Shown here in pieces: positions 5,996 through 38,262 of a stretch of DNA of 64,000 nucleotides (its first letter is position 1; each line of letters starts with the position of its first letter). Origin of the DNA: Pecten maximus (taxonomy: Eukaryota); assembly GCF_902652985.1 (NCBI RefSeq), contig NC_047033.1:13020001-13084000 (forward strand). The letters run 5' to 3'. Under the pieces are notes generated by a model. The model saw only the letters and a program-made list of their open reading frames with translations, was not told the origin of the DNA and ran no database searches. The translations under genes and the position numbers were made by a program.

Positions 5996-6026
<31 letters not shown>
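5996..6026 (+). repeat. Poly-G tract (31 G) preceded by T8
   Basis: Directly visible; ~270 bp upstream of the acceptor of mucin A's first coding exon. Confidence 0.9.
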
Positions 6027-12300: not shown

Positions 12301-15300
12301 GGCGCTTACAACGCCTCCATGAAGCTGATCAGTGATGCACAACAACGTTTGGAATCAATACGATCTGCAGCAGGGATAGGACCGCTTAGTATTGACTATG
12401 TCAAAACCAACAGGAACGCGGAATTTGGTCAAGGTAGGCAAACTCACTCACCTAAAATAGAAAGTAGACTGAAAATCTATTTTCGATAACTCTTACTAAA
12501 TTAATACATAAACAAATGTTGTCAATTTAATGTTTCCACTAAAGAACATTAATGAACGAATAATTTAAATGTTGTTCAGTCTGAATGAATATAGAAATGT
12601 ACATTTTTTTTTCATTACATACGTAGATGACTTTATTATTAAAACTAGTTCAATCTAATTAAATATGATAGAAATCCCATTTATCAATATCTCAACCACA
12701 GCGATGAGAAGTAATATTTGCACAATTTATGAAAATATCATTCAATTGTATAAGAAATATGGTTATTTATTATGACCCAGTTTGATAATTTTGTTTTACA
12801 TTTCAGCCATGGAGGACTCGCAGTCCCCCTGTAATGCTACAAACATATGTCCCTTAGGTTACACGTGCCTCCACACGTCCACTGAGACCACATGTGTACA
12901 TAAGTGTAAGATAGATAACCCGTGTCACAACGGAGGCACGTGCTATGTAAATGAACAGAACATAGTTGGATGCAAGTAAGATTTTTAACATATATAATGT
13001 AAATAATCATCTTGCCGTATATCACATGCATATCATTTATTTATTTCATAATAAATTTAGTTTAAACAACATTTTTTACTAATCTTCTCTCTGTGGCTGT
13101 TATAACTCGGTTAATGAATAAAAATTGTATGAGAACTATTGAAAGGAAGGTAATATCCTGTCAAAAGTGAGAACGTCAGATTTTCAATTAAATGTTTGTT
13201 AAAAAAGATTTTCATTAAATATTTATTCTTTTCAAACACAGAATGGAAAACGCACTAAGCTTATTAACAATTACGAAGTAACTTTCAATATGTATAAAAA
13301 GGGAAAGGGCGATAAAATGCATATGCTAATCGAGTTGAAATAGTTTCTATTCCCCTTTTTATTTCAGATGTAAACCGAATTCAGATTTGATATACTTTGG
13401 AGATTATTGTGAAAGTTCCGATGAACGTTTGGCATTAGAGAAAAAGTACATCATCGTCATTGCCTGTGTGTCGGGTGCTGCTCTAGTACTACTTTTTGTT
13501 TTTATAAGCTGTATATGTTTTCGTAAAAGACCTTTCGACCGAGGAGAGTATAGTTTTCAGTAAGTATACAAATCAAAATCAATTGTTCCAACGATTGTAC
13601 AACAGGCAGCAAGATATGAGAACCATTCAAAACAAATTTGGAGTTTAGAGTAGAGCTAAAATTAATTCAACTACATAATACAACTGCTTCATCCTTCTAG
13701 GTCTCGACAGCGATACTAAGAGCCTAAAGTTGTTATAGGAGGAAACTGAACTCGAAACATATCAGATCAAAAGAAATATCAAACGTTTGATAGAGATGTA
13801 CAAAAGACTTTCAATAAATTCCATATTTTCAAAAACAGGGATTCAAAGAATTATAATTACAAACACGTATATCCTGAACCGCGTCATTACCCAAATGAAG
13901 TAAAACGTGACAAGCTTGCAACGATAACCTCGGACGCTAAAATCCAGTAGTGTCTACCATCCGCAATCACAAAGGATTGTACATAAGGCACACAAGAATA
14001 TTTGTTATCAAAAACAGTTTTGTTGCTCGTTACAGTTCTATTACTTCAAGAAATGCAATTAACTCTCAATATAATTTTCTATGATGAAAAATGCAGTCAT
14101 TGCTTATAACATCTACTTATCAACTACATTGTATTCTTATCAACTACTGACATAAACGGCTTATCTGGTTAATATCTCCAAACTTATTTGTATCCAATGC
14201 ATTTGATTTCACAATTACTTACATTCCATTTACTGGTAGAAGCACTTCTGCCTCCTTCATGAAACGTGATTGCAAATCATATTTGGTTCGAATATCACGA
14301 TGGATTGATTGGTTGCTAATCCGTGATGAACTTTAAAACATATGTGCTGTGATGTATGATGATGATGTATGGACCACAGTATTGTCGCTCGTGTGAAATT
14401 AATAATTCTAAAATTGATTTAATGGTTTTTATAATGTTTTCATGTGAACCTTTTTCGTTCGCGGCCATTACAATTCAGTCTTATCTATTGTTTACCTAAA
14501 TCAAAGGTTTTAAGAATAGCCAAGTTTTTATTTTACTGTCAAAAATGAAAGTAGTGTGTTTTTGTCATAATGATATATCTTTTTTTTACGCCATGCCGTA
14601 AAAATTAAAATTCCACAAAGGGAGATAATCTATTCGTGTCCAATATATTTTTGTACAGAGAGTTCAATGACGCATACTACTACAGATCGACTAAGGATGA
14701 TGTCGACACTATACACAAGCTCTACGCTGTAGATAACCAGGCTTATGATAACGCTACCTTCGATAACGACAATACGTCCACATTTAAAGAAGCTAGGGTA
14801 AGTATGGAAGAAGCTATGGAAGGAGCAAAAAAACTAGGGTCAGTGTCAAATAAATTAGGGTAGTTGTCAAATAAGCTAGGGTAGGTTTCAAAGAAATCTG
14901 TTTCCAGTGTCATAGATGCTACGGTAAGTGTCTAAAAAGCTATGGCATGTGTCAAAGAAGCTATGGTATCTGTCAAAGAGCTAGGGTAAGTGTCTCAGAA
15001 GCTAGGGTAAGTGTCTAAGAAGCTAGGGTAAGTGTCTAAAAAGCTAGGGTAAGTGTCTAAGAAGCTAGGGTAAGTGTCTAAGAAGCTAGGGTAAGTGTCT
15101 AAGAAGCTAGAGTTAGTGTCTAAGAAGCTAGGGTAAGTGTCTAAGAAGCTAGGGTAAGTGTCTAAAAAGCTAGGGTAAGTGTCTAAAAAGCTAGGGTAAG
15201 TGTCTAAGAAGCTAGGGTAAGTGTCTCAGAAGCTAGAGTTAGTGTCTAAGAAGCTAGGGTAAGTGTCTAAAAAGCTAGGGTAAGTGTCTAAAAAGCTAGG

Positions 15301-18300
15301 GTAAGTGTCTAAAAAGCTAGGGTAAGTGTCTAAGAAGCTAGGGTAAGTGTCTAAAAAGCTAGGGTAAGTGTCTAAAAAGCTAGGGTTAGTGTCTAAAAAG
15401 CTAGGGTTAGTGTCTAAGAAGCTAGGGTAAGTGTCTAAACAGCTTGAGTAAGTGTCTAAAAAGCTAGGGTAAGTGTCTAAGAAGCTAGAGTTAGTGTCTA
15501 AAAAGCTAGGGTAAGTGTCTAAGAAGCTAGGGTAAGTGTCTAAAAAGCTAGGGTTAGTATCTAAGAAGCTAGGGTAAGTGTCTAAAAAGCTAGGGTAAGT
15601 GTCTAAGAAGCTAGGGTAAGTGTCTAAGAAGCTAGGGTAAGTGTCTAAGAAGCTAGGGTAAGTGTCTAAGAAGCTAGGGTAAGTGTCTAAGAAGCTAGGG
15701 TTAGTGTCTAAGAAGCTAGGGTAAGTGTCTAAAAAGCTCGGGTAAGTGTCTAAAAAGCTAGGGTAAGTGTCTAAGAAGCTAGGGTTAGTGTCAAAGAAGC
15801 TAGGGTAAGTGTCTAAAAAGCTAGGGTAAGTGTCTAAGAAGCTAGGGTAAGTGTCTAAGAAGCTAGGGTAAGTGTCTAAGAAGCTAGGGTAAGTGTCTAA
15901 AAAGCTAGGGTAAATGTCTAAGAAGCTAGGGTTAGTGTCTAAAAAGCTAGGGTAAGTGTCTAAAAAGCTAGGGTAAGTGTCTAAGAAGCTAGGGTAAGTG
16001 TCTAAGAAGCTAGGGTAAGTGTCTAAGAAGCTAGAGTTAGTGTCTAAGAAGCTAGGGTAAGTGTCTAAAAAGCTAGAGTTAGTGTCTAAGAAGCTAGGGT
16101 AAGTGTCTAAGAAGCTAGGGTAAGTGTCTAAGAAGCTAGGGTAAGTGTCTAAGAAGCTAGAGGTTAGTGTCGAAGAAGCTAGGGTAAGTGTCTAAGAAGC
16201 TAGGGTAAGTGTCTAAGAAGCTAGGGTAAGTGTCTAAAAAGCTAGAGTTAGTGTCTAAGAAGCTAGGGTAAGTGTCTAAGAAGCTAGGGTAAGTGTCTAA
16301 GAAGCTAGGGTAAATGTCTAAGAAGCTAGGATAAGTGTCTAAGAAGCTAGGGTAAGTGTCTAAGAAGCTAGGGTAAGTGTCTAAGAAGCTAGAGTTAGTG
16401 TCTAAGAAGCTAGGGTAAGTGTCTAAAAAGCTAGGGTTAGTATATAAGAAGCTAGGGTAATTATCTAAAAAGCTAGAGTTAGTGTCTAAGAAGCTAGGGT
16501 AAGTGTTTAAAAAGCTAGGGTAAGTGTCTAAGAAGCTAGGGTAAGTGTCTAAGAAGCTAGGGTAAGTATCTAAGAAGCTAGGGTAAGTGTCTAAAAAGCT
16601 AGGGTAACTGTCTAAGAAGCTAGAGTTAGTGTCTAAGAAGCTAGGGTAAGTGTCTAAAAAGCTAGGGTAAGTATCTAAAAAGCTAGAGTTAGTGTCTAAG
16701 AAGCTAGGGTAAGTGTCTAAAAAGCTAGGGTAAGTGTCTAAAAAGCTAGGGTAAGTGTCTAAGAAGCTAGGGTAACTGTCTAAGAAGCTAGAGTTAGTGT
16801 CTAAGAAGCTAGGGTAAGTGTCTAAAAAGCTAGGGTAAGTGTCTAAGAAGCTAGGGTAACTGTCTAAGAAGCTAGAGTTAGTGTCTAAGAAGCTAGGGTA
16901 AGTGTCTAAAAAGCTAGGGTAAGTATCTAAAAAGCTAGAGTTAGTGTCTAAGAAGCTAGGGTAAGTGTCTAAAAAGCTAGGGTAAGTGTCTAAGAAGCTA
17001 GGGTAAGTGTCTAAAAAGCTAGAGTTAGTGTCTAAGAAGCTAGGGTTAGTGTCTAAGAAGCTAGAGTTAGTGTCTAAAAAGCTAGGGTAAGTGTCTAAGA
17101 AGCTAGGGTAAGTGTCTAAGAAGCTAGGGTAAGTGTCTAAGAAGCTAGGGTAAGTGTCTAAAAAGCTAGGGTAAGTGTCTAAGAAGCTAGGGTAACTGTC
17201 TAAGAAGCTAGAGTTAGTGTCTAAGAAGCTAGGGTAAGTGTCTAAAAAGCTAGGGTAAGTATCTAAAAAGCTAGAGTTAGTGTCTAAGAAGCTAGGGTAA
17301 GTGTCTAAAAAGCTAGGGTAAGTGTCTAAGAAGCTAGGGTAAGTGTCTAAAAAGCTAGAGTTAGTGTCTAAGAAGCTAGGGTTAGTGTCTAAGAAGCTAG
17401 AGTTAGTGTCTAAGAAGCTAGGGTAAGTGTCTAAGAAGCTAGGGTAAGTGTCTAAAAAGCTAGGGTAAGTGTCTAAGAAGCTAGAGTTAGTGTCTAAGAA
17501 GCTAGGGTAAGTGTCTAAGAAGCTAGGGTAAGTGTCTAAGAAGCTAGGGTAAGTGTCTAAAAAGCTAGGGTAAGTGTCTAAGAAGCTAGGGTAAGTGTCT
17601 AAGAAGCTAGGGTAAGTGTCTAAAAAGCTAGGGTAAGTGTCTAAGAAGCTAGAGTTAGTGTCTAAGAAGCTAGGGTAAGTGTCTAAAAAGCTAGGGTAAG
17701 TGTCTAAAAAGCTAGGGTAAGTGTCTAAGAAGCTAGGGTAAGAGTCTAAAAAGCTAGGGTAAGTGTCTAAGAAGCTAGGGTAAGTGTCTAAGAAGCTAGG
17801 GTTAGTGTCTAAGAAGCTAGGGTTAGTGTCTCAGAAGCTAGGATAAGTGTCTAAGAAGCTAGGGTAAGTGTCTAAGAAGCTAGGGTAAGTGTCTAAAAAG
17901 CTAGGGTAAGTGTCTAAGAAGCTAGGGTAAGTGTCTAAAAAGCTAGGGTAAGTGTCTAAGAAGCTAGAGTTAGTGTCTAAGAAGCTAGGGTAAGTGTCTA
18001 AGAAGCTAGGGTAAGTGTCTAAAAAGCTAGGGTAAGTGTCTAAGAAGCTAGGGTAAGTGTCTAAGAAGCTAGGGTTAGTGTCTAAGAAGCTAGAGTAAGT
18101 GTCTAAGAAGCTAGAGTTAGTGTCTAAGAAGCTAGAGTAAGTGTCTAAGAAGCTAGGGTTAGTGTCTAAGAAGCTAGGGTAAGTGTCTAAAAAGCTAGGT
18201 TAAGTGTCTAAGAAGCTAGAGTTAGTGTCTAAGAAGCTAGGGTTAGTGTCTCAGAAGCTAGGGTAAGTGTCTAAAAAGCTAGGATAAGTGTCTAAAAAGC

Positions 18301-21300
18301 TAGGGTAAGTGTCTAAAAAGCTTGAGTAAGTGTCTAAAAAGCTAGGATAAGTGTCTAAGAAGCTAGGGTAAGTGTCTAAGAAGCAAGGGTAAGTGTCTAA
18401 GAAGCTAGAGTTAGTGTCTAAGAAGCTAGAGTTAGTGTCTAAGAAGCTAGGGTAAGTGTCTAAAAAGCTAGGGTAAGTGTCTAAGAAGCTAGGGTAAGTG
18501 TCTAAGAAGCTAGAGTTAGTGTCTAAGAAGCTAGGGTAAATATCTCAGAAGCTAGGTTAAGTGTCTAAGAAGCTAGAGTTAGTGTCTAAGAAGCTAGGGT
18601 AAGTGTCTAAAAAGCTAGGGTAAGTGTCTAAAAAGCTAGGGTAAGTGTCTAAAAAGCTTGAGTAAGTGTCTAAGAAGCTAGGGTAAGTGTCTCAGAGGCT
18701 AGGGTAAGTGTCTAAGAAGCTAGGGTAAGTGTCTAAGAAGCTAGAGTTAGTGTCTAAGAAGCTAGAGTTAGTGTCTAAGAAGCTAGGGTAAGTGTCTAAA
18801 AAGCTAGGGTAAGTGTCTAAAAAGCTAGGGTAAGTGTCTAAAAAGCTAGGGTAAGTGTCTAAGAAGCTAGAGTTAGTGTCTAAGAAGCTAGGGTAAGTGT
18901 CTAAGAAGCTAGGGTAAGTGTCTAAGAAGCTAGGGTAAGTGTCTAAGAAGCTAGGGTAAGTGTCTAAGAAGCTAGGGTAAGTGTCTAAGAAGCTAGAGTT
19001 AGTGTCTAAGAAGCTAGAGTTAGTGTCTAAGAAGCTAGGGTAAGTGTCTAAAAAGCTAGGGTAAGTGTCTAAAAAGCTAGGGTAAGTGTCTAAAAAGCTA
19101 GGGTAAGTGTCTAAGAAGCTAGAGTTAGTGTCTAAGAAGCTAGGGTAAGTGTCTAAAAAGCTAGGGTAAGTGTCTAAGAAGCTAGGGTAAGTGTCTAAGA
19201 AGCTAGGGTAAGTGTCTAAGAAGCTAGAGTAAGTGTCTAAAAAGCTAGGGTAAGTGTCTAAAAAGCTAGGGTAAGTGTCTAAGAAGCTAGGGTAAGTGTC
19301 TAAAAAGCTAGGGTAAGTGTCTAAAAAGCTAGGGTAAATGTCTAAGAAGCTAGGGTAAGTGTCTAAGAAGCTAGGGTAAGTGTCTAAGAAGCTAGAGTTA
19401 GTGTCTAAGAAGCTAGGGTAAGTATCTAAGAAGCTAGGGTAAGTATCTAAGGAGCTAGGGTAAGTATCTAAGGAGCTAGGGTAAGTGTCTAAAAGCTAGG
19501 GTAAGTGTCTAAGAAGCTATGATAGGTGTCATACTCCATAGGATTAGGGAACGATATATACATGTGGATATATGAAGCACCTAAAATATTAATTTAGTAA
19601 TATATTTATTTATAGAATATTAAATATGACCGCATATCATTGCAATTCATCTTTCTAGCATATAGAACTCTTCAATTATCATTGGAGTCCAAAATTGTGA
19701 CAATCCCGAAGGATATTCAGGACAAATTAACTATGCATTGAATGGTCGACAAATTGAATTTATTGCCAATTATGAATGTTACTCGGCTGATATATAAATG
19801 GAATGACAACTGTTATCAAGCAAGTCAGATGTATATTTTGTAACTATAATTCTTATCCAACTGACCTTAAATCATGGATTTGTAGTTAAAGCTACACACG
19901 TTGGCATTTGACCTGCTTAAGAATGTTACTTATCAATGTAAGCAAAATATCAGTAAGTAAAAAAAACCACATTTTTATCAACAACCGCCTGAGGCCAGAA
20001 AGTGTAGACACAGTTATGTCACTATTGTAACGTTTATAATATTTTATTATAAAATTTACATTTCATTAAAAATATAGAATCGGTTGTCTTTACGTAATAA
20101 TTTCAGGGAAAGAAATTGTTTTTAAAAAATCCATGACATTAATGGTACCCATACAATCCCATTAAGACTCTCTATCCTATAATATCTCGTTTACGTTTTT
20201 CTTTTGTTCAGTAGGCATACATGTTTATGTACATATTCTTGATAACTTCATTTTGATGAACTTGTCATCTAGAACAATTAATTGATTTCTTTTGTCATAA
20301 CCACACACAAATTGACATTTCACATTCATCATCGTTTGACTAATGTATTTTTCTACAATACAAATATTGTTCAAACAAAATAAATAAAATAACGACAGTT
20401 TTCTATTGTCCAATAGAAAACTAACTGCATGCTTTAAATAAAAGTATTTAGATGCCAATATGCCGATAAGACTTTAAATGCATTACGAATTGTTGTTAAA
20501 GCATAGCTTTCAAATAAGCGGACTATAACCAAATCTTTCCAACGCTAAAATTTTAGCACATTTTCACAAAATATTACTAATTGAAAAATGGAATTATCTT
20601 TACATGACTTAAATCAATTAATCTCTATTTGTTTACGCTGTCGAAAAGTAATCTGTAAAAGTTTCACATTGATGTATTTTTGTCGTTGGATGTTGTTGCT
20701 GTGATATTAATTGCTGTTGTCTTTCAAAGCTGATACTTTTCGTCATTACGTGTTGACACTTAAATGCCTGTCCTGATTTCTGTATTGACCCTATATAATT
20801 GTCTCCATCGTATGTCTACCCATACCTGTCCTAATATGTCCAGGATGACATTTGCCCCGTTTAGCGTGTCAGCGTTGTGTATTGAAAGTAGGTCTTTGTT
20901 TTTGCTCCCGTGAAATATGTAGTTTGTTGCATTGTGTTGACGTTTGCTGAGCGTTGGCATTGTGCATTGACGCTGTGAGATCTACTTTGTATTTGTGTGT
21001 TGACGATATGATGAGTTTTGTATTTGTGTGTTTACGATATGATGAGTTTTGTATTTGTGTGTTGACGATATGATGAGTTTTGTATTTGTGTGTTGACGAT
21101 ATGATGAGTTTTGTATTTGTGTGTTGACGATATGATGAGTTTTGTATTTGTGTGTTGACGATATGATGAGTTTTGTATTTGTGTGTTTACGATATGATGA
21201 GTTTTGTATTTGTGTGTTGGCGACATGATGAGTTCAGTAATAGTGTGTTGACGGTGTGGTGTAGGTTTTCCTTTTCTGTTGATGTTAATATACTGTACTG

Positions 21301-21507
21301 TTAACCCATTCTTATGTCAATGAACTGATGTACTTTTTGTCACTGTTTTTAAACATGTGTTGTTTAGGTGGTGATCACGTGGTATTTCATTGTTTAGTAT
21401 GGACGCTGTGATGAGATTTCTCAATGTATCGTTGTTGTCGTGTTGCTGCCGTGAATTTCCGTATCTGAAATTATCACAATTTTTCATTATTTTTTTTCCA
21501 GATATAA
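6308..21507 (+). CDS. Transmembrane SEA/EGF mucin, paralog A (MUC13/MUC3/MUC17-like architecture), 9 coding exons, ~1139 aa
   Basis: Manual splice with all GT-AG sites and consistent phases: 6308-6386, 6851-9316, 11107-11222, 11670-11728, 12240-12433, 12807-12975, 13368-13559, 14659-14797, 21502-21507 (3420 nt). Signal peptide, PTS, SEA with RGSVVC, EGF-like, TM, tail ending EARI*. Exon sizes 116/59/169/192/6 are identical to paralog B. Confidence 0.9.
6851..9316 (+). CDS. Mucin A exon 2: ~820 aa Thr/Ser/Pro-rich (PTS) domain bracketed by CYNLC and CVAVC
   Basis: ORF 6859-9462; acceptor ttacag|, donor TGG G|GTAAG at 9316; the end (TIDCVxVCxxWGRTP...PSPYxNxxPxW) matches paralog B. Confidence 0.93.
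9406..9481. repeat. Near-perfect hairpin (32-bp arms, 1 mismatch, 12-nt loop), probably the centre of a palindromic MITE
   Basis: GTAAGTTATGTTTTTAAAGTTACAAAAGACAC (9406-9437) vs GTGTCTTTTGTAACTTTTAAAACATAACTTAC (9450-9481). Confidence 0.85.
11107..11222 (+). CDS. Mucin A exon 3: SEA domain N-part (EIAVFPLHFTISFNIPWTSDY...)
   Basis: tttcag| acceptor, |gtaag donor, 116 nt; homologous to B exon 33937-34052. Confidence 0.9.
11670..11728 (+). CDS. Mucin A exon 4: SEA (LENIYIHIPGLRSKTVNDL)
   Basis: 59 nt with canonical sites; homologous to B LETIYKDIPGFRKITIVHY. Confidence 0.88.
12240..12433 (+). CDS. Mucin A exon 5: SEA C-part with GSVV motif
   Basis: ccacag| then (S)RGSVVCTY...NRNAEFGQ; overlaps ORF 12250-12489. 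Confidence 0.9.
12807..12975 (+). CDS. Mucin A exon 6: Cys-rich / EGF-like modules
   Basis: SPCNATNICPLGYTC...CVHKCKIDNPCHNGGTCYVNEQNIVGC; 169 nt as in B. Confidence 0.93.
13368..13559 (+). CDS. Mucin A exon 7: EGF end + transmembrane helix + basic stop-transfer
   Basis: CKPNSDLIYFGDYCE...YIIVIACVSGAALVLLFVFISCICFRKRP...GEYSF; 192 nt as in B. Confidence 0.93.
14659..14797 (+). CDS. Mucin A exon 8: cytoplasmic tail ending ...TFKEAR
   Basis: Acceptor gtacag|, in frame with ORF 14636-14863, donor AGG|GTAAGT; DNQAY and EAR motifs shared with B. Confidence 0.85.
14789..19520 (+). repeat. 21-bp tandem satellite, consensus GAAGCTAGGGTAAGTGTCTAA; homogeneous core ~14980-19520 (~215 copies) plus ~9 degenerate proximal copies
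   Basis: Directly visible. The first 15 nt of the unit equal the last 9 nt of exon 8 plus the GTAAGT donor. It lies in the last intron of mucin A. Confidence 0.97.
20987..21233. repeat. 31-bp minisatellite (GAGTTTTGTATTTGTGTGTTGACGATATGAT), ~8 copies
   Basis: 31-bp periodicity (21001, 21032, 21063...). Confidence 0.92.
21502..21507 (+). CDS. Mucin A terminal coding exon: Ile + stop (ATA TAA)
   Basis: Strong acceptor ttttcattattttttttccag|ATATAA; mirrors B tttcag|ATTTAA; AATAAA at 21938. Confidence 0.7.
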   Translation: M

Positions 21508-23690: not shown

Positions 23691-23849
23691 GGCCCAGTTC
23701 CATCAATATTCCTTAACTTTTAATTCCCCATAGGAAAGAATTACAGTATTTAAGGATTGTTCCTTACCTAAGATTTATCTTTAAATTCTGTGATGCTTTC
23801 CTATGGAAAAGGCTTTCCTTGTGTTAAGGAGCATTGATGAAACTGGGCC
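23691..23849. mobile_element. MITE, 159 bp, ~27-bp imperfect TIRs (GGCCCAGTT...)
   Basis: GGCCCAGTTCCATCAATATTCCTTAAC ... GTTAAGGAGCATTGATGAAACTGGGCC. Confidence 0.75.
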
Positions 23850-26572: not shown

Positions 26573-26928
26573 ACTTTTATATTTATAAAACTTTTTCTGT
26601 AAAGGCCACTTTTATATCCATAAAACTTTCTCTGTAAAGGCCACTTTTATATTTATAAAACTTTCTCTGTAAAGGCCACTTTTATATTTATAACACTTTC
26701 TCTGTAAAGGCCACTTTTATATCTATAGCACTTTCTCTGTAAAGGCCACTTTTATATCTATAAAACTTTCTCTATAAAAGCCACTTTTATATCTATAAAA
26801 CTTTCTCTGTAAACGCCACTTTTATATCTATAACACTTTCTCTGTAAAGGCCACTTTTATATCTATAACACTTTCTCTATAAAGGCCACTTTTATATCTA
26901 TAAAACTTTCTCTATAAAGTCCACTTTG
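26573..26928. repeat. 35-bp minisatellite (CTTTCTCTGTAAAGGCCACTTTTATATCTATAAAA), ~10 copies
   Basis: 35-bp periodicity (26591, 26626, 26661...). Confidence 0.92.
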
Positions 26929-27858
26929 ATATTGCCATTGTCGAATATCCTCTATTTACATTGTTACAAAAGAAATGTATAGAGTATCTGTTTCTATATA
27001 AATGCATCTTTTTATATCAATAAAATGAAATCTTATATTGATATCAAGTGTTATACTAGAGGGATTTAAGTATGGAAACGAAACAATAAATGTAAAATCT
27101 TTATGGACGATGCTTCATGTATATTACCAAAATAATTTGTAACACACATTTGTGTTGGTAATATTTATTTTAGTAACATCGACTTTGAATAAAATAAATC
27201 AGACAATATTAGCCGTTATCTAAACATAGCTAATAAATACCTGACTGCTGGAGGTAAAACATACAGGGAAATAAAGAGTAATGGTCAAATCATTTCTTTT
27301 ATTTAGCTGATTTTGCCCATATTACTACGGCTAGTGTACAACAGTAATTAAACTTGGATGTTTTATTCAAAATATTAACAATGTGTTAAAGTTGACATTC
27401 AAAACACAAATTTCTCAAAACTTCGTGATGGAATAATAATCACCGTGATATCAGCACAATAACCCTAAGATGTAAGATAATATAGAAAAATGAGTACACA
27501 TCACTTAGTTTCGTCTTTACATTTAATGAGTGGCATTTCAGTGTGATAACACTATAAAAACGGACACTGTCTGGGTATGACCTGAGTGTCCATAAGATGT
27601 AAACCATTAGAAAATCCAACTGTGACATTCCTCTTAACTGAATGTTTGAATACGACAGAGAATAACTTATTCAAAGACCAATAATTCATAAAATATAAAC
27701 AAACAAAAAATAAAACATAAATAAATCATACAAAAAACAATTGTTTGATTTAACAAATGTGTGAGATATTTTCAACATTCACGTTAGTTTCAATCCTACA
27801 GAAATATGTTGTACATATATTCATCATTACGCTAACCTAACCCGATAAATCTCTATGA

Positions 27859-27959
27859 TAAAAATTACCACATTTATAGAATATCATTCATGGTCAGTAT
27901 GATTTACAATTTGAGTGTTTAAAAATTACCACATTTATAGAATATCATTCATGGTCAGT
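27859..27959. repeat. Exact 40-bp direct duplication
   Basis: TAAAAATTACCACATTTATAGAATATCATTCATGGTCAGT at 27859-27898 and 27920-27959. Confidence 0.85.
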
Positions 27960-30180
27960 CAGTCTGGATACAGTTATCTACAATGAATATTTTATATGCA
28001 GAATTCTACCCAGTGCATGTAAAAAAATATTTTTTGAAGAAAGATTGATAGAATCTTGAGGTGTGATTGAGAAATATCCAACCTGCGGAATAAAGTCTTA
28101 CTGATGATTTGCCGAGAGACATTCAGTGATATCAGCTCGAAAAATGGAGATTCTCTGTCACGTCCTCAAAGAAGGGGATGGTTGTTTCAATCCCATAATA
28201 CTATTTTAATTACGCTGAGTCCGATTTTTCCAATATTTGAAAAATATATTGCAATATATTGTTGCGAGAACGTGTGATCTGCCATACCTCAGGGGTCGAA
28301 AAAAAATCTTGAGCAAGTGAAACTGTAGACAAATCTGAATAATGGGAGAGGGAAAAAGTCATTCTAATTCTGCTGATGACATCAATTGATCTACCCTTAG
28401 CTGACCCAATACCTAGTTTTTCAATAGGAGATGATAGACACGTTTGGCTTTCCGGGGGGAAAGCCAACCCACAAAACAAACAACTTGACACGTTGTTCAA
28501 AAGCATTGTTCGCTTTCTGGAATTTAAATGAGAAATGTTAATCTTGTCAGCTTTCATTAACATTATTAATATGCACATATTATATAGTTTCAGAAATGAA
28601 TCGGTTCATAAGAGAAAAAAATGTTAAAACGCGTAATGAATATCTGTTACTGAAATATACGCAAAGGTTTGAGAATATTATTAAACGGAGAGAGAAATAT
28701 ATGTTTAAATACCATCTGACCTGGCTCAGGGGTGGACATTTCTCTGTTGTCGTGACGTGAATCAATACATAAATCCGTAATGTATTATTGCTAAATGTCT
28801 TCACTTCAGACCACTTTCACTGGTCAATGAAGTTGGAGTCCTTATGGGTCAAACATATTCGTGCGAACATGACAATCCCACCTACTAATGGCTTGTATGT
28901 CAGATAAACAGAACCTTACATTGGTCTGTTCCGTGGATAGCAATTTCTCTTATCCTGGACAGGGATTTTCCACAATTTTACCTATGTGAGATTTTCTTAC
29001 CTCATCCAAGGGTTGAGGCTCTTTGAACGTTCTCAACAATTGCATGTCTAGCGCATTATGCCATGTTTGTCTGCAAAGCTCTGTCATTTATATCGAACAG
29101 AGATGCCATATCAAGACAGTTTAATGCTTATATTTACGTTTGATGAATTGTTTTTATTTGAAAAATATGTTGGTTTCGACTTATAATTTAAATTTCCTGC
29201 CTTATCGTCAATCGCGAAATTATACCGTTTCAAAACTGGAACAGCCTTTCTTCTCACGTGCAGATTGCCACACAAAATAGTGCATACAAAAACGACAAAA
29301 ATAATGATATTGGTTTTCACAATGTTTTATTTATTATCATATTTGCTTTATTTGATGTGTTTTTGTCGATATTATACCATTTAGTTTAGTTGTTTCAAAT
29401 GTCTTGTGTTTGGTCACTCAGGAGTTCAGAGTTCGATTCACATTGGCCGCCATCTTTGTTTACATTGTAAATGTATTCTTACGCACTGGCATCATGGCAT
29501 GCTTTGGGTGTCAGTTATACTCTCATAGACAACACTTTGTTTTGGTTAGTTTATTTAGTGACATTGCCAGACAAATGTAAATATCAGATTATAAACAAAG
29601 TAAGGGGAAAATAATCATTCATCCCAGTGAGACAGGGGCCCTCGACAAGCCTCATGTTTGGCACCTTAAGAGTCTGGTTCTCTACAATGTTTTTTGTGGC
29701 AAGGTTTATCCGCTAATCTGACTTATACTGAAAATAATTGCATTTACAGTATACAGATGTATGGGATATGTATATCATTTTCTTGGGTATATGACGTTTT
29801 AGTGATGTAGATTATTACAGAACTACTTTCATACGAAATGGAAGTAGAATATATAGTAAGATGAAAAAGATGAAAAGCAAGAACAGATTTCGCGGGAGTT
29901 TTAATCTACGAAAATATGGCTTAATCTGCACTTAGCAGATGACATCGAATTTATTTTAGGAAAATAAATCATTAATCAGTACAACGTAAGTATGTTTGAA
30001 CAAATAAACACGCAATCTACATATGGAGATGTATTGAAACTTTACTGACTACTATACAACACGACACGATATGATAAGTTAATTATATGGTTGAGTGAAT
30101 ACCAAATATCCTAAGTAAATCCCTGTATGTTTTTTACATTGCTTTTTATATATGGTGTTGTTTCAGATAACGTTGTCGCC

Positions 30181-30274
30181 ATGGTTACTAGGTGGACGGT
30201 TGTGTTGGTCGTCATGGCTTTGACTCTTATTACACAAGGAGCGTCCATGTCTCTCTCATTATACCAACAACAAG
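30181..30274 (+). CDS. Mucin B coding exon 1: signal peptide MVTRWTVVLVVMALTLITQGAS...
   Basis: Acceptor tttcag at 30166, GCC ATG G context, donor G|GTAGG phase 1. Confidence 0.88.
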
Positions 30275-33200
30275 GTAGGTCTCGGCCAAGTTCCGGACAT
30301 ACGTCCCTTTCTGCAACTCCAGATTTCGTCTCATATTTCCTTCCGGATTTCTCGTTTGGTCCCAACCTTTTTACTTTTTTTTTTCAGAATATGATAAATG
30401 TTACCAAGTATGCCCTACTACAACAACAACAACAACGACGACGACGACCACAACAACTCCTACAACCACAACAACACCAACCACAACTCCTACAACCACA
30501 ACAACACCAACAACAACTCCTACAACCACAACAACACCAACCACAACTCCGACAACCACAACTACAACACCTACAACCACCACAACACCGACGACAACAA
30601 CAACACCGACGACAACAACAACACCGACGACGACAACAACAACTCCGACGACAACAACAACTCCGACGACAACAACAACAACAACACCGACAACAACAAC
30701 AACAACAACAACAACACCGACAACAACAACACCGACAACAACAACAACAACAACACCGACGACAACAACAACATCTACAACCACCACAACACCGACGACG
30801 ACAACAACAACCACTACAACACCGACGACGACAGCAACAACCACGACTACAACACCTCCAACTACCACAACGACTGCGACAGCAACTACACCGTCTACGA
30901 CTAAAGCTACAACCACTTCACCGACAACTACCGCAAGTAATTGTTTTCTAGAATGCCGTACAGCTTCTTCGGAAAATATCAGCAAACCAACAGCTATACC
31001 AATTTTACCAAACTCCACAGGTACGGTAACTAACGTACTACGAACTACAAAAGTTTTGACAATGACTCCTACAAGCCAAATGGCATTAACACCAACACAG
31101 GTCACAAAAAATACGACCCCGCTCAAGGTGACTGTAACCCCAGTACAGTTGACTAAACCTACTCTACTTAACCCAACAAACACAAACTGTGTTAAGGTAT
31201 GTCGTTCATCGACATTGTCAACAACAACTACCACCACTACTCCGACAACTACAGTAACAACGACACCAACAACTACTACAACTCCGACAACTACTACAAC
31301 TCCGACAACTACAACCACCACCACACCTACAACAACCACGACACCAACAACTATTACAACTCCGACAACTACAACAACTCCGACAACTACTACAACTCCG
31401 ACAACTACTACAACTCCGACAACTACTACAACTCCGACAACTACAACCACCACCACACCTACAACAACCACGACACCAACAACTACAACTACCACGACAC
31501 CAACAACTACAACTACCACCACGACGCCTACAACTACTACAACTCCGACAACTACAACAACTCCGACAACTACAACAACTCCGACAACTACAACAACTCC
31601 GACAACTACAACCACCACGACGCCTACAACTACTACAACTCCGACAACTACAACAACTTCGACAACTACAACAACTCCGACGACTACAACAACTCCGACA
31701 ACTACAACCACCACGACGCCTACAACTACCACCACGCCTACAACTACAACAACTCCGACAACTACAACTCCGACAACTACAACCACCACGACGCCTACAA
31801 CAACTCCGACAACTACAACCACCACGACGCCTACAACTACCACCACTCCGACAACTACAACAACTCCAACAACTACAACAACTCCGACAACTACAACAAC
31901 TCCGACAACTACAACCACCACAACGCCTACAACTACTACAACTCCGACAACTACCACAACACCAACAACTACGACCACCACAACACCGACAACTACAACA
32001 ACCACCACTCCGACAACTACTACAACTCCGACAACTACCACAACACCAACAACTACCACAACACCAACAACTACGACCACCACCACTCCGACAACTATAA
32101 CAACTCCGACAACTACGACCACCACCACTCCGACAACTACAACAACTCCGACAACTACAACAACCACCACTCCGACAACTACTACAACTCCGACAACTAC
32201 AACAACCACCACTCCGACAACTACAACAACACCGACAACTACAACAACCACCACTCCGACAACTACTACAACTCCGACAACTACCACAACACCAACAACT
32301 ACCACAACACCGACAACTACAACCACCACCACTCCGACAACTACCACAACACCAACAACTACAACAACCACCACTCCGACAACTACCACAACACCAACAA
32401 CTACAACAACCACCACTCCGACAACTACTACAACTCCGACAACTACCACAACACCGACAACTACAACAACGACCACGCCAACAACTACTAAAACTACAAC
32501 ATCCACCACGCCAACGACTACAACGACTCCGACAACTACAAAAACTACTACTCCAACCAAAACGCCAACAGCTTCCACCACCACCACCACTTCTTCAACT
32601 ACCATGCCACTCGCTTCTACTACACATTGTGTTAAAGTTTGTCGATCAACATCACCCCCGATGCCTATATCGTCTTTGACCTCAAATCAACCGACATTCA
32701 CGTCAAAACTTATGCCTGTTCAACAGCCAAAGTTGACAACTCCGACGACAGCAATTACTGTAACATCAAAAGGAAATACATCACCGAATACTATTATAAA
32801 CACCCCCAAGACAACGTCGTCAACTAACCATACGACAGAATGTGTACAGGTTTGTAGAACCACTTCACACACGACACCAACTACTTCAACATCGACAACA
32901 ACTCCGACAACTACAACAACTCCGACAACTACAACAACTCCGACAACTACAACATCTCCGACAACAGTAACCACCACAACACCGACAACCACAACTACAA
33001 CATCTCCTACTACAACCAGCACAAAACCAACAACTACCACAACCACACCGACAACTACTACTCCATCAACTACAACCACTACGTCTACAACTACTACCAC
33101 TCCATCAACTACTACAACCACAACGCCAACAACAACAACTCCTACAACTACAACAACTCCGACAACTACAACAGCTCCGACGACTACAACCACCACCACG

Positions 33201-35482
33201 CCTACAACTACTACCACTCCAACAACTACAACCACAACACCAACAACTACAACTACACCGACAACTACCACAACAACCACGCCCACAACTACAACATCAA
33301 CAACCACCACTACCACTACTCCAACAACTACAACCACAACAACACCAACAACAACCACACCAACTACAACTACAATAGATTGTGTAAAGGTTTGCCGATC
33401 CTGGGGCAGAACTCCATTATTTCCGACCACACCGGACAAAAAGCCAGTCACCACTGTACCGTCTCCATACAGCAATAAGACTCCTCTCTGGGGTAGGTTA
33501 TCTCTTAAACTACCATTACTGTAAACGTCCATATCTTGGCGCACACATATTTTAGCGCAAACTTCTCATTAAAATAGTGCCAAAATCGCTAAAATTAAAT
33601 TATCGCTAAGATATGTATCTTTGTGTTTTTTTATGATCTGGATGAAAATAAGAAATCCTTTGGCACCTTTATGCGTGTATTTATATTTTTGATCTTTATG
33701 CAGTGTTAAATTGAACAATTGTTTCAAGGTAAAAATGGAAGAATATTTAACTTCAATAAACATTTTCCAAACATGCATATTTTGGGAAACGATTTTCTTG
33801 ATGTGTAATTTACATGAACTATCATAAAAATAACACCTCTATCATCACCAACCATTTTTTAAATTGTAAAATACAATTGTTGAGCGTATGCTTTATAAAT
33901 ATGTTTTGTTTATTTTTGGGAGTGATTTATTTTCAGAATCTGCCTTATTTGTTTTACCGTTTACCATATCTTTTGATATTAAATGGGATGATGACTACCT
34001 CCAGAAGGAGTCTGATCAATACCGGGATCTTTCTAGGAAGGTCATAGATCTGGTAAGACACGCAATACAGTAAAATAGCTTGATATGCAAATATAGAATA
34101 AAAAGGGAATATATATAAAAGAATTATTACATTTTCAGTTTTGTGTCAGATGCCGATTGGTCTACATCTTATCGCGTGTTATCCCAGGTTACATCGAATT
34201 GAATTCGCTCGTGCGGGCGTTCTGTGACGTTGCATAGTTTCATCCAATCATATTTGTCAGACACATTCCGTCAAGTTGCGGGAGAGTGCAACATGTTTTA
34301 TGAAATATGCTGTATCTATGACGTTGCGGTGGATTTATGTAATAAAATGCATTTCCAATGGCAAGGGATCATGCCTTCAGCATTTGCATGTTCTGCCATG
34401 TTCTGGTTTTGCTACAGAAATGAAAGGACACAGTTATGACACTTTGTTTCTGTCTAATTGATGACTTATGGAGTTAAGATAACCAGTATCAACCTCGGCC
34501 GGATATTGGTCATCTTCGATTTTACGTACACTACTGACAATTGTCGACAGTATAAGCCAAGTTGTATTCTTTCTTATTTTACAGTTGGAGACGATTTATA
34601 AAGACATTCCAGGTTTCAGAAAAATTACCATTGTTCATTACAGGTACAAACGTTACACAATTAGTATTGTATTCAAAGTTTGTTATGATTTAGTGCTATA
34701 TAGTTTAAAGTAGATGTGCATATATATGAATAAGTCATAACTTTACTTTAAAAGAGTAACATTGATTCCAAGCTACAAAGACAACTATAGTAACAATGCT
34801 ATGAAATCTACCACATCTTCAACTACATACGCTCAATACAACCTTGTATTCATTTATTTGTTTATTTTAAACTTCAATTTAAACATTTTTATTGCTATAG
34901 ATAATAGTATTTTTTTTAGAATTTTACATTTGGACTTTTTTTTCTCACTAATACATACTTATTCCTTAAAGAGCAACATACGCTAACACGATTTTTAATT
35001 CCTCATTAGTTTTTCCATTATTTCAATTGTATCCGCAGGCATGGCAGCGTGGTTTGCACATACGCTGTGAATTTGGACGCGACGTCACAGCGAGATAAAA
35101 CATGGGCAACAACTCTTGTTAGATTACAGACAGTTCAAAACCAAATGGACTCCTGGAGTACTGTCCACAATGTAGGAACTCTCGTTCCTGGATATATCAG
35201 GAAAAACCGCCCAGCTGAATATGCACAAGGTATTTAAAAACGATACGTGGGTGGCCGTTACCCCCACCTGATATCGCTACAAAGATTCACGGCGGCAAAA
35301 TTAATGATATAACAACATTTTCATAAAACAAAATAATTTCGGTAATCCAAAAGCTATCTCCAGATAGATACTGAAAAAAACAGCATGCATTTAGGCACAA
35401 AATGAGAGGAAAATGTCAGAAAGACGAAAACAAACAAAACACACGCGCGCGTGCGCGCGCGCCAAAAAGCAAACACACAAAC

Positions 35483-35560
<78 letters not shown>

Positions 35561-38262
35561 AGCAAAACAAACAAAATTCATACACACAAAGAAACACAAA
35601 CAAAAGACAAAAACAGACAGGCTAGTATTCAGTTTTCTCATGTACTCGGAGTGTTTTGATCTTACAATTGTATGGTTCTGAATACGTAGTCAATTGGTTA
35701 CTAGGAAACGCGTAGTCAGGTCATCCGGGCATCTAGGAAAGGGTTCTAGAGGGGTCTCGGGTCAGCTTTCACATATGGAGTTCACCAGTGGCTGGAAGGA
35801 GGATAACATTAAGAAGATATTGCTTGTATTGTTTTTAGGGGATTTATAAAACATTCTCGCAACACTAAATGTAATGGTGTATTACATGAAGTGTCATTGT
35901 GTGTAAACTTTCGTTGTTTTCGTGGTTGCAATGGAACTGAGAATGTAAATAATTGTTGTATGTATTATTGTTATATTATTTGATGGACTTAACCACAAAA
36001 GAGTGTACCCAAAAAATAAGTTGAAAATTCCCTACAATATAAAGACGGCTATTTTACAATATCCCCCCTCCGGACTGGACAACTGACGGACATTATAGGG
36101 TTATCATCTGGGAACGAAACTGTGTCCAGAACCCTCATATTGTAATCATAGCAATGGAAAAACGTGTTTGTATGTTATATATCTGTATTAAAGTTCAAAT
36201 GATGTTATTGACCGATTTTTTCTTATTTTTATTTTATTTTTTTATTTGCAGCCCAAGTCATTGTTCAGTCTCCTTGTTTTGCCACGGGAATTTGTCCAGT
36301 TGGATATGACTGCCAATACACTGGGGGAGTAACGTCTTGCATTCATAAGTGTATGACTACCAATCCTTGTCAAAACGGAGCGGAATGTTACGTTAATGAA
36401 CAGAACAATATCGGTTGCAGGTGTGTAAAATCGAAAATCACTTAAAAGTCGACACTTCCCGAGGAATCAAAAACCGGAACTATAACAAAAGGCTAACATA
36501 ACAAATAGCATCACATCGTGACAGCAAGACTCCATCACGCCGACCGATGATAATCGGTGTACAGGTCGATTCGGCTTCTATTAATTTCAATTGTTACACC
36601 TCACTGCAATGGTCATTTATTCTATTGAAGGTTGCAGAGTAGTCACTCACACTTCACGCTTAAATCCCAAACTGGTTGTGATATATATTTATATAGTCTA
36701 TTCACACTCATACTTAACAACCAGAAGAACCTGATTTAAGATACAAGTTTGTAGGCGTTAGAGTTGTCTAACAAAATGTTCATGTAAACAATTGTTCATT
36801 CATTAGGTGTAAAACAAGTGACAAGTTTGTGTATTACGGGGACCATTGTGAAAACTCAGACGAACGCCTCAAGATGCAGTCTAAGTATATCATTCTCCTG
36901 GCGTGTGCTGGGGGCGCTGTCCTCCTCATAGCGCTTATCTGTGTGTGTTGTCTCTGTGTCAAACGAAGACCGAGGGAGAAGGGAGAGTACCAGTTTCAGT
37001 AAGTTCCCTGATCTATAATTAAATCATATATCAATGCGGATTACTGTAAATGTACTAATTTTGGTGCACTCAAATTTTAGGGCCCAACCGAATTTAAACA
37101 GACTAGCACAATGACGGATTAGCGTTTTACTTTTTTTTTTTTGCTTTTTTCCGATATATTCAATATGAAGGTCATCAGTTGTTCTTACGCATAATATCGC
37201 TGCTGACGGTTAAAAAAATATTATTAATTATTGTAGGGAACTCCGGGATTCGTACCACTATCCTCCAATAACGGACCTGGAGATCGACAATAGCTTCTCC
37301 GGTGCTGACAATCGGGCCTACCAGACGTCGTTTGTAAGGGAGGAAGTACCAGGATCATCTCATCGATTTTCGACCAACGAAGCAAGGGTAACGCGTGAAA
37401 AATATACCAAATTCTGATTATAGAAATAAAACGAAGCAAGGGTAACGCGTGAAAAATATACCAAATTCTGATTATAGAAATAAAACGAAATAAGGGTAAC
37501 GCGTGAAAAATATACCAAATTATAATTATAGAAATAAAACGAAATAAGGGTAACGCGTGAAAAATATACCAAATTCTGATTATAGAAATAAAACGAAATA
37601 AGGGTAACGCGTGAAAAATATACCAAATTATAATTATAGAAATAAAACGAAATAAGGGTAACGCGTGAAAAATATACCAAATTCTGATTATAGAAATAAA
37701 ACGAAATAAGGGTAACGCGTGAAAAATATACCAAATTCTGATTATAGAAATAAAACGAAGCAAGGGTAACGCGTGAAAAATATACCAAATTCTGATTATA
37801 GAAATAAAACGAAATAAGGGCAGCACGTGAAAAAAGAAAAACAAAAACAAAAAAAAACGTGAAAAATATGCAAAATTCCAATTAAAGAAATGATCATAGT
37901 ATAATAATAATATACGTTTTGCTCCATTGTTAAGTGTCAAAATATGGCTATTTTGGTTTCATGTGAACTTCAAATTATCACTTATCATCATTATATTACC
38001 AGCATAAGGGCAAAACAGACAGAAGTTTACAAATGAGAATCGGCAGAGCAATTGCATAAGAAATGTGTTGTTCTATCGGGCTGCAACTAAAGCGCTACAT
38101 TGTCATAAACAATTATGTAGCATGGCGTGAAAGCCAAATCACGGAAACAACCGATATGTTATGTTATACTTAATGAACAAAACATATATTTAAGACTCTA
38201 TTTAAAAAAAAAAGAAGTTTGTTATTATATCTAATAGTGTTCTTTTATTATTTCAGATTTAA
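30181..38262 (+). CDS. Transmembrane SEA/EGF mucin, paralog B, 9 coding exons, ~1360 aa
   Basis: Manual splice: 30181-30274, 30388-33492, 33937-34052, 34585-34643, 35039-35229, 36252-36420, 36807-36998, 37237-37387, 38257-38262 (4083 nt). All GT-AG, with the same phases as paralog A (1,1,0,2,1,2,2,0). Confidence 0.92.
30388..33492 (+). CDS. Mucin B exon 2: ~1035 aa PTS domain of P(T)5/P(T)7 repeats with six CxxxC motifs
   Basis: Acceptor after a long T tract, reads EYDKCYQVCPTTT..., in frame with ORF 31056-33524; donor TGG G|GTAGG. Confidence 0.93.
33937..34052 (+). CDS. Mucin B exon 3: SEA N-part
   Basis: ESALFVLPFTISFDIKWDDDYLQKESDQYRDLSRKVIDL; 116 nt. Confidence 0.92.
34585..34643 (+). 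CDS. Mucin B exon 4: SEA
   Basis: LETIYKDIPGFRKITIVHY; 59 nt. Confidence 0.9.
35039..35229 (+). CDS. Mucin B exon 5: SEA C-part with GSVV
   Basis: (R)HGSVVCTYAVNL...NRPAEYAQ; overlaps ORF 35049-35237. Confidence 0.92.
35439..35560. repeat. Compound microsatellite: (GC)n-like tract, (CA)~24, (CAA)~10
   Basis: Directly visible; intronic in mucin B. Confidence 0.92.
36252..36420 (+). CDS. Mucin B exon 6: Cys-rich / EGF-like
   Basis: QSPCFATGICPVGYDC...CIHKCMTTNPCQNGAECYVNEQNNIGC; 169 nt. Confidence 0.93.
36807..36998 (+). CDS. Mucin B exon 7: EGF end + TM helix
   Basis: CKTSDKFVYYGDHCENSDERL...YIILLACAGGAVLLIALICVCCLCVKRRP...GEYQF; 192 nt. Confidence 0.93.
37237..37387 (+). CDS. Mucin B exon 8: cytoplasmic tail ending ...STNEAR
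   Basis: ttgtag| ELRDSYHYPP...ADNRAY...TNEAR |GTAACG; homologous to A exon 8. Confidence 0.85.
37377..37834 (+). repeat. 54-bp minisatellite, 8 full copies plus a partial, containing the exon-8 end and splice donor
   Basis: Unit ACGAAGCAAGG|GTAACGCGTGAAAAATATACCAAATTCTGATTATAGAAATAAA; GGGTAACG recurs at 37386+54n up to 37764. Confidence 0.95.
38257..38262 (+). CDS. Mucin B terminal coding exon: Ile + stop (ATT TAA)
   Basis: Acceptor tcttttattatttcag|ATTTAA; gives the same EARI* end as A; AATAAA at 38694. Confidence 0.7.
   Translation: M

What the first reader, a model, noticed from the sequence alone, without database searches (positions are those of the whole stretch)
14789..37834. The same exon-end/5' splice donor is tandemly amplified, apparently independently, in both mucin paralogs ('splice-donor arrays')
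Seen: in A the last intron starts with an array of GAAGCTAGG|GTAAGTGTCTAA (21 bp, ~215 copies). In B it starts with ACGAAGCAAGG|GTAACG... (54 bp, 8 copies). In both, unit 1 is the real exon-8 end (codons E-A-R) plus the donor. The units differ in length and share only the EAR|GTAA core, so they look like two separate amplifications at the homologous site. I saw no comparable array at the other 14 donors of the two genes. Established: competing 5' splice sites bind U1 snRNP, and a stop more than ~50 nt upstream of a junction typically triggers NMD. Inference: copy number could act as a rheostat on the last splice, controlling C-terminus identity and mRNA level. Alternatively this site is a recurrent repeat-birth hotspot.
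Basis: partly seen in the sequence, partly recalled or inferred. Interest (0 to 1): 0.9.

Follow-up and report, generated by a model that had tools for sequence, protein, structure and literature searches.

The report
Splice-donor minisatellites in two scallop mucins
In two neighbouring king-scallop mucin genes, the last few coding bases plus the splice signal that follows them have been copied in tandem into the last intron (about 226 and 8 times). This is a known, probably harmless kind of repeat that is very common in this genome, and nothing here shows it is a dedicated splicing control.

Summary
TRF and my own parsing find a 21-bp array of 226 units (14789-19533) and a 54-bp array of 8 full units plus one decayed unit (37376-37895). 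Each starts in register at the end of the homologous exon 8 (…EAR|GT) of two old paralogs. These are SEA/EGF/TM mucin-like genes of Pecten maximus. None of the 12 other inferred donors has downstream copies.

The units share only the exon end and GTAA, and the arrays are far younger than the gene duplication, so independent birth is the simplest reading.

This is the "mirage" junction minisatellite known from amphioxus and from human F7 and CBS. The scan has already reported it many times on other DNA of this genome.

I confirmed that it is common:
- Triple AGGTAAGT arrays give 9,708 genome matches, against 938-2,817 for controls.
- An unrelated FIH/HIF1AN exon end is amplified about 19 times.

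Within array A the donor positions are not conserved above background.

The rheostat idea is untested and unlikely. The coincidence between paralogs is modest: about 1/8 if each gene has one array.

The parts
14658..14797 (+). Exon 8 of mucin-like gene A (cytoplasmic tail, ...TFKEAR)
   Evidence: Frame and translation. Homology to B exon 8. AG acceptor at 14656-14657.
14798..21501 (+). Inferred last intron of gene A (6,704 nt); 71% of it is the donor array
   Evidence: Donor AGG|GTAAGT at 14798. Acceptor (T)8CCAG ends at 21501, followed by ATA TAA. Inferred from paralog conservation, not from RNA.
14789..14809 (+). Unit 1 of array A: last 9 nt of exon 8 plus the authentic donor and 6 more intron bases
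   Evidence: In register with the consensus, 18/21 identical.
14810..14997 (+). Decayed proximal units 2-10 of array A; most donors are degraded, with stronger ones at 14924 and 14986
   Evidence: By hand count, the decay is no stronger in donor positions than elsewhere in the unit.
14998..19533 (+). Homogeneous core of array A. Across the whole array, 144 units carry AGG|GTAAGT. Multi-unit block duplications are visible.
21502..21507 (+). Start of inferred last exon of A: Ile codon plus TAA stop
37237..37387 (+). Exon 8 of mucin-like gene B (...STNEAR)
37388..38256 (+). Inferred last intron of gene B (869 nt); about half of it is the donor array
   Evidence: Donor AGG|GTAACG at 37388. Acceptor ...TTATTTCAG ends at 38256, followed by ATT TAA.
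37376..37807 (+). Array B: eight full 54-bp units, each holding 12 nt of exon end plus 42 nt of intron start. Units 1, 2 and 8 carry GAAGCAAGG; units 3-7 carry GAAATAAGG.
37808..37895 (+). Ninth, decayed unit of array B (donor lost: GGGCAGCA; A-rich insertion)
38257..38262 (+). Start of inferred last exon of B: Ile codon plus TAA stop
13366..13560 (+). Transmembrane exon 7 of A (paralog anchor)
   Evidence: tblastn of A against B, 46% identity. Only two copies in the genome.
36805..36999 (+). Transmembrane exon 7 of B
   Evidence: 85% identical to M. yessoensis P0001.

Best explanation
Both arrays are junction-spanning ("mirage"-type) minisatellites.

**Origin (inferred).** In each gene a short stretch covering the last 9-12 coding bases of exon 8, the 5' splice site and the first intron bases was duplicated in tandem. 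It was then expanded by slippage or unequal exchange: to 226 x 21 bp in A and 8-9 x 54 bp in B. The two events were separate. They share a seed only because the EAR codons and the donor are held constant by selection on the protein end and on splicing.

**Effect (inferred from precedent, not shown here).** The arrays are most likely tolerated by-products of a genome that makes minisatellites at a very high rate, and they swell the last intron. Splicing most likely uses only the first donor, the one next to the exon, through exon definition or 5'-to-3' choice as in human F7. The last intron may be especially tolerant. The last exon adds only Ile plus a stop, so a slip to a later donor would cost one residue and add a short tail.
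For: **Anatomy**
- Arrays and register.
- Only these 2 of 14 inferred donors carry copies.
- Edge units are decayed and the core is homogenised, with block duplications, which is typical minisatellite turnover. PMC3087553 describes the same for mirages.
- Donor positions in the array A core are not conserved above background: 5.9% vs 3.9% mismatch.

**Independence**
- The units share only the exon end plus GTAA.
- B's unit is unique in the genome.
- A-like hits elsewhere share only a donor-like core.
- The duplication is older than the Pecten/Mizuhopecten split.

**Commonness in this genome**
- AGGTAAGT x3 at 8-38 nt spacing gives 9,708 matches, with about 10 separate arrays in the first 7.3 Mb of C1.
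- Controls give 938, 2,817 and 2,103 matches, with 4 arrays in 12.9 Mb.
- Nine such loci are packed with arrays, many with CAG|GT cores.
- One is verified as a true junction array: a 43 bp x 18.8 array built from the exon end ...HPCDRQSQ|GTAAGT of the FIH/HIF1AN ortholog, PDB E = 1e-28.

**Precedents**
- Amphioxus mirages do not disturb normal splicing.
- In human F7 IVS7 only the most upstream of 5-9 identical donors is used.
- The human CBS VNTR c.1444_1467+7(16_21) spans a donor.
Against: - No RNA evidence was obtainable for these two genes, so the last intron, its acceptors and donor choice are all inferred.
- In A, 144 downstream donors are as strong as the first. The F7 work found that consensus-strength pseudo-sites can capture some splicing, so some leakage is plausible.
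- Arrays at the homologous donor of both paralogs are not the default expectation if the per-donor rate is only about 1%.
- Two other unverified first-reader notes report homologous-intron arrays in other paralog pairs of this genome. That could point to site-specific propensity or to inheritance.
- Donor-bearing arrays are 3-10 times enriched over control 8-mers. Birth or survival is therefore not simply random with respect to donors.
Confidence: 0.7

Rival explanations
1. Inherited array with turnover. The ancestral gene already carried a minisatellite at this donor before the A/B duplication. Each copy has since been rebuilt, with new unit lengths re-seeded from unit 1. The coincidence would then be descent, not recurrence. 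The arrays would still be neutral.
For: - Array A has an old decayed layer at its 5' edge under a young core.
- An earlier unverified note reports junction arrays kept at the same junctions in three distant scallops (s1-788721).
- Two other notes report homologous-intron arrays in paralogs.
Against: - The intron-derived parts of the two units show no similarity beyond GTAA.
- Neither intron holds a relic of the other's unit.
- Array B is uniformly young (95% identity), with only one decayed unit.
- The paralogs are only about 46% identical in their best exon, so an array would have had to persist for a very long time.
Confidence: 0.15
2. Functional donor array. The repeated U1-binding sites compete with, or buffer, the last splice or a nearby poly(A) choice. 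Copy number would then tune C-terminus identity or mRNA level, and it was selected in both paralogs.
For: - The same site is hit in both paralogs.
- 144 near-consensus donors lie in a terminal intron.
- Downstream-donor use would place a stop (14861-14863 in A; 37415-37417 in B) upstream of the last junction.
- The human CBS junction VNTR is reported as associated with enzyme activity (title of Lievers 2001, cited in PMC2630376).
- Consensus-strength pseudo-sites can shift splicing in F7 constructs.
Against: - Donor positions show no conservation within array A, and 20% of units carry a weakened AGA|GTTAGT.
- The units differ completely in size and content between the paralogs.
- The same repeat type sits in unrelated genes all over this genome.
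- Identical downstream donors are silent in F7 and harmless in amphioxus.
- No RNA data were available here.
Confidence: 0.07
3. No last intron, or not always. Exon 8 reads through the GTAA into a short tail (A: 21 more residues; B: ...EARVTREKYTKF) and ends at an intronic poly(A) site. The arrays would then lie in a 3' UTR, or in a composite terminal exon, rather than in an intron.
For: - Read-through frames stop quickly in both genes.
- B has AATAAA at 37425-37430, 8 nt after the read-through stop, repeated in every unit.
- A has AATAAA near 14847.
- The M. yessoensis model of the B ortholog ends at exon 7, so no annotated relative confirms exons 8-9.
- I estimate the I-plus-stop acceptors could be a post hoc pick at roughly 1 in 10.
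Against: - A has AGG|GTAAGT exactly at the point where similarity between the paralogs ends.
- Both genes have a strong pyrimidine tract plus AG followed by Ile-stop.
- AATAAA is expected by chance in 65% A+T DNA.
- Junction arrays in this genome typically start at true donors, as in the FIH case.
Confidence: 0.06
4. Assembly artefact: the arrays, or their lengths, are products of mis-assembly of repeats.
For: A is 4.7 kb of near-identical 21-mers, so its exact copy number could be wrong.
Against: - The window has no N.
- The array has structured variants, decayed edges and unique flanks.
- The assembly comes from about 66x PacBio reads with polishing and curation (PMC7191990).
- B is only 0.5 kb.
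Confidence: 0.02

Closest known systems
Amphioxus "mirage" minisatellites (Adh3, globins BflGb6/BflGb9; Canestro et al. 2002 as cited in PMC3087553)
   Same: - Tandem repeats whose units span an exon-intron boundary.
- Copies keep AG/GT signals.
- Edge units escape homogenisation.
- Normal splicing is reported as undisturbed.
   Different: - Here the arrays are in a mollusc.
- They sit at the same donor in two old paralogs.
- One array is far larger: 226 units and 4.7 kb, against a handful of units.
- Splicing and length polymorphism were not tested here.
Human F7 intron 7 37-bp VNTR (PMC1557585)
   Same: The first unit spans the exon-7 donor, so the real donor is followed by identical pseudo-donors. 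This is the best-studied model of how such an array is read: only the most upstream donor is used.
   Different: - F7 has 5-9 copies of a sub-consensus donor in an internal intron of a vertebrate gene.
- Array A has 144 near-consensus copies in a terminal intron whose last exon carries one codon.
Human CBS 31-bp VNTR c.1444_1467+7(16_21) (PMC2630376, citing Lievers et al. 2001)
   Same: - The unit is 24 exon bases plus 7 intron bases.
- It has 16-21 copies and is polymorphic.
- Copy number is reported as associated with enzyme activity, which is the nearest precedent for a rheostat.
   Different: That is an association study in humans. No comparable population or expression data exist for the scallop genes.
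Other junction minisatellites of the same Pecten maximus genome
   Same: Same structure in unrelated genes. I verified the FIH/HIF1AN exon end at C1:4.977 Mb (43 bp x 18.8). Earlier notes of this scan report many more.
   Different: The present case adds the homologous-site coincidence in paralogs and an unusually long array.

Membership tests
Junction-spanning ("mirage") minisatellite | Head-to-tail array of short units (about 10-160 bp) | tested here: met
   TRF finds 21 bp x 223.7 and 54 bp x 8.5.
Junction-spanning ("mirage") minisatellite | First unit contains the real exon end and its splice site, in register with the array | tested here: met
   The exon end is inferred from paralog homology and splice consensus, not from RNA.
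Junction-spanning ("mirage") minisatellite | Copies retain the splice signal | tested here: met
   144 of 226 units carry AGG|GTAAGT. All 8 full B units carry AGG|GTAACG.
Junction-spanning ("mirage") minisatellite | Boundary units are excluded from homogenisation | tested here: met
   A units 2-9 and the last unit are decayed, and so is B unit 9.
Junction-spanning ("mirage") minisatellite | Regular mRNA uses the copy next to the exon | not testable with these tools
Junction-spanning ("mirage") minisatellite | Length instability or polymorphism | not testable with these tools
   No reads and no second haplotype were available.
Regulated cluster of alternative 5' splice sites | Splice-site positions conserved above the rest of the unit | tested here: not met
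   Mismatch is 5.9% at the 9 donor positions and 3.9% at the other 12, over 212 core units.
Regulated cluster of alternative 5' splice sites | More than one donor used in RNA | not testable with these tools
Recursive splice sites | Pyrimidine tract plus AG directly abutting GT (AG|GTAAGT) | tested here: not met
   The unit reads ...AAGAAGCTAGG|GTAAGT. It is purine-rich upstream, and the AG is separated from the GT by one G.
SEA-EGF-TM membrane mucin | Long Ser/Thr/Pro-rich exon | tested here: met
   ORFs 6859-9462 and 31056-33524.
SEA-EGF-TM membrane mucin | SEA and EGF domains before a single TM helix | tested here: inconclusive
   Single exons give SEA E = 0.0037 and EGF E = 0.011, both below Pfam cut-offs. 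The relative P0010 passes SEA at 32.3 bits against a cut-off of 26.4. A hydrophobic stretch is visible in exon 7. The joined spliced model was not searched.

The most novel reading that the evidence does not exclude
Junction minisatellites are not placed at random. Certain donors, here the EAR|GTAA end of the last coding exon, would be intrinsically prone to seed or retain arrays. The same site then fires repeatedly in paralogs and orthologs. In a terminal intron, the resulting string of up to 144 U1-binding sites would measurably alter last-intron removal or 3'-end choice, making copy number a heritable expression variant.
Probability: 0.1. Interest if true: 0.6.

Novelty: new member of a known kind. 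Interest (0 to 1): 0.25.

Why it matters
On its own this is one more example of a known repeat type, so it changes little.

Its value is as material:
- A natural array of 144 equal-strength donors behind one real donor, in a terminal intron, is a far stronger test of how a cell picks the first 5' splice site than the 5-9 copies of human F7.
- The scallop genome as a whole seems to hold more than a thousand such donor arrays by my rough extrapolation. It could show whether splice sites attract tandem duplication.
- For annotation it is a warning. Gene predictors and short-read aligners will misplace junctions in these arrays.

Tried and rejected

Whole-genome pattern counts were used instead.
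- Annotated proteins: the search for homologous proteins with the 867-aa mucin ORF found nothing. With P0001 it found only P0001 itself. The representative library holds no P. maximus copy of A or B.

- The joined spliced model was not built or searched; exons were searched singly by reference.

**Tests that did not discriminate**
- Upstream-ORF length as a test of real exons before other arrays: median 98 nt against 86 nt for random sites.

**Ideas rejected**
- The A unit is a genome-wide satellite or transposon part. Hits at C1:5.22 Mb, C1:47.4 Mb and C16:30.5 Mb are 70-75% matches that share only a GTAAGTGTCT-like core.
- Selective disabling of proximal donors in A. The decay of units 2-9 is about as strong outside the donor positions (hand count).
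- Recursive splice sites (see membership test).
- A minus-strand coding repeat. The LDTYPSF frame is open by chance and no ORF was listed there.

Full report
**Where we are.** The window is C19:13,020,001-13,084,000 of a 918,306,378-bp assembly in 3,983 scaffolds, with a longest scaffold of 60,076,705 bp. These figures are exactly those of the king scallop Pecten maximus assembly (PMC7191990).

**The two genes.** Genes A (about 6.9-21.6 kb) and B (about 30.1-38.3 kb) are tandem paralogs. Each has:
- a long Thr/Ser/Pro-rich exon;
- weak SEA and EGF signals;
- a transmembrane exon;
- a short cytoplasmic-tail exon.

Exon-by-exon tblastn pairs their exons at 30-52% identity. The TM exon finds only these two copies in the genome. 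A Mizuhopecten yessoensis protein (P0001, KP79_PYT24201) is 65-85% identical to B exons and 27-59% to A. The A/B duplication is therefore older than the split of those two scallop genera. I did not build or search a joined spliced model; exons were searched singly.

- TRF reports 14834-19530 (21 bp x 223.7, 91% matches) and 37376-37834 (54 bp x 8.5, 95%).
- Exon 8 ends at 14797 in A (...TFKEAR) and at 37387 in B (...STNEAR), followed by GTAAGT and GTAACG.
- The two exon-8 peptides align with z = 5.7.
- Parsed from the exon end, A has 226 units. Unit 1 is 9 exon bases plus the real donor. Units 2-9 are decayed. The core is homogeneous, with 144 AGG|GTAAGT and 35 AGA|GTTAGT units.
- B has eight full units that begin 12 nt before the exon end, then one decayed unit.
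- The array fills 71% of A's inferred last intron (6,704 nt) and about half of B's (869 nt).
- In both genes a strong acceptor is followed by an Ile codon and TAA.
- Of 14 inferred donors, only these two have downstream copies of their junction.
- The A unit has stops in all three sense frames (read directly from the unit).
- Reading through the donor stops at 14861-14863 in A and at 37415-37417 in B, giving ...EARVTREKYTKF in B.

**What it is.** The structure matches a described repeat type. Tandem repeats that span an exon-intron boundary were named "mirages" in amphioxus Adh3 and were found again in amphioxus globins. There they do not disturb normal splicing, and their edge units escape homogenisation (PMC3087553). 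Two human genes show the same thing:
- F7 intron 7, a 37-bp VNTR of 5-9 copies in which only the most upstream donor is used (PMC1557585);
- CBS, whose VNTR is written c.1444_1467+7(16_21), meaning 24 exon plus 7 intron bases (PMC2630376).

The lead to this literature came from earlier notes of this scan. Those notes report the same repeat type many times on other DNA of this same genome. I checked the papers myself.

**Is it common here?** Yes.
- Three exact AGGTAAGT at 8-38 nt spacing occur 9,708 times in the genome. The reversed motif gives 938. A same-composition control, AGTGAAGT, gives 2,817 and its reverse 2,103.
- Counting separate arrays in the listed part of C1, the donor motif gives about 10 in 7.3 Mb and the control gives 4 in 12.9 Mb. 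That is roughly a 4-fold excess, binomial p about 0.01 by my arithmetic.
- Extrapolated, this is on the order of a thousand arrays of the strictest donor type alone. A control 8-mer sitting in hundreds of arrays implies about 10^5 minisatellites in the genome. Both figures are rough estimates of mine.
- Nine fetched loci are packed with arrays, many with CAG|GT cores.
- One I verified by homology. At C1:4.977 Mb, a 43-bp unit repeated 18.8 times is the last 35 nt of an exon of the FIH/HIF1AN ortholog (...YPYPIYHPCDRQSQ|GTAAGT; PDB hits at E = 1e-28) plus 8 intron bases.
- The A-like hits elsewhere in the genome (C1:5.22 Mb, C1:47.4 Mb, C16:30.5 Mb) share only a donor-like core. The B unit is unique.

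**Independent or inherited?** The units differ in length and share only GAAGC[T/A]AGG|GTAA, the part constrained by coding and splicing. The arrays are 91-95% homogeneous, while the genes are about 46% identical even in their best exon. Two separate births is the simplest reading. An old array that has been rebuilt in each copy cannot be excluded, because A does have an old decayed layer at its 5' edge.

**How surprising is the shared site?**
- If each gene simply has one array among eight donors, the chance that they coincide is 1/8.
- With a per-donor rate of roughly 1-8%, a given paralog pair shows such a coincidence with probability of roughly 0.1-5% (8f^2). The 1% end is my estimate; the 8% end comes from unverified counts in earlier notes.
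- This genome has very many duplicated genes, and 784 windows were read.
- Two other first-reader notes report similar paralog cases. They are unverified.

I therefore treat a site-specific hotspot as possible but not shown.

**Function.**
- Inside array A the nine donor positions are, if anything, less conserved than the other twelve: 5.9% vs 3.9% mismatch over 212 units.
- A fifth of the units carry a weakened donor.
- The variant map shows block duplications typical of unequal exchange.
- The decay of the proximal units is not focused on the donor (hand count).

Nothing in the sequence points to selection for or against the decoy donors. By analogy with F7 and amphioxus, and by exon definition (my knowledge), the first donor should be the one used. 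The F7 study did find that consensus-strength pseudo-sites can take some splicing, so some leakage in A is plausible.

**What could not be done.**

**Verdict.** The feature is real and correctly described. It is a new member of a known kind, ordinary for this genome, with a modest extra point (same donor in two old paralogs) and an unusually large array. The splicing-rheostat reading is untested and unlikely.

Noticed in passing
L014, L017, L018 (G000:C1:5216000-5245999): About 30 kb that is almost wall-to-wall minisatellites: 22 bp x 265, 34 bp x 43, 22 bp x about 140, 20 bp x 156, 56 bp x 40, 28 bp x about 110, 15 bp x 103 and more. Several have donor-like cores.
   Followed up: partly
L022:4432-5235 (G000:C1:4977431-4978234): The FIH/HIF1AN ortholog has its exon end (...HPCDRQSQ) plus GTAAGTC amplified 18.8 times as a 43-bp unit. 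Two further arrays flank it in the same 7 kb.
   Followed up: yes
window 37425-37430 and each later B unit: Every 54-bp unit of array B carries AATAAA 8 nt after the read-through stop. An intronic poly(A) isoform ending ...EARVTREKYTKF is conceivable. It could also be chance in A+T-rich DNA.
   Followed up: no
window 56139-57056: A 36-bp x 23 repeat is open in one + frame (TTKVKASQFNGM-like 12-residue repeat, 305-aa ORF) and in one - frame. It ends just before a CACAAG|GTAAGT donor at 57054, so it is probably a coding minisatellite in another gene.
   Followed up: partly
window 151-470: A 25-bp x 12.8 array with a GTAAGA core at the window's left edge. It could be another junction array, but its upstream exon, if any, is cut off.
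   Followed up: no
window 20986-21253: A 31-bp x 8.6 array inside A's last intron, about 250 nt before the acceptor. It does not touch the junction.
   Followed up: no
window 26573-26932: A 35-bp x 10.3 array between genes A and B, with a CTGTAAAG core.
   Followed up: no
window 5996-6026 and 30420-30854: A run of 31 G upstream of gene A, and an (ACA)n tract of 145 copies at the start of B's Thr-rich exon region.
   Followed up: no
window 14789-19533, minus strand: One minus-strand frame of the 21-bp unit is stop-free (LDTYPSF). No long ORF is listed there, and I take it for chance.
   Followed up: partly
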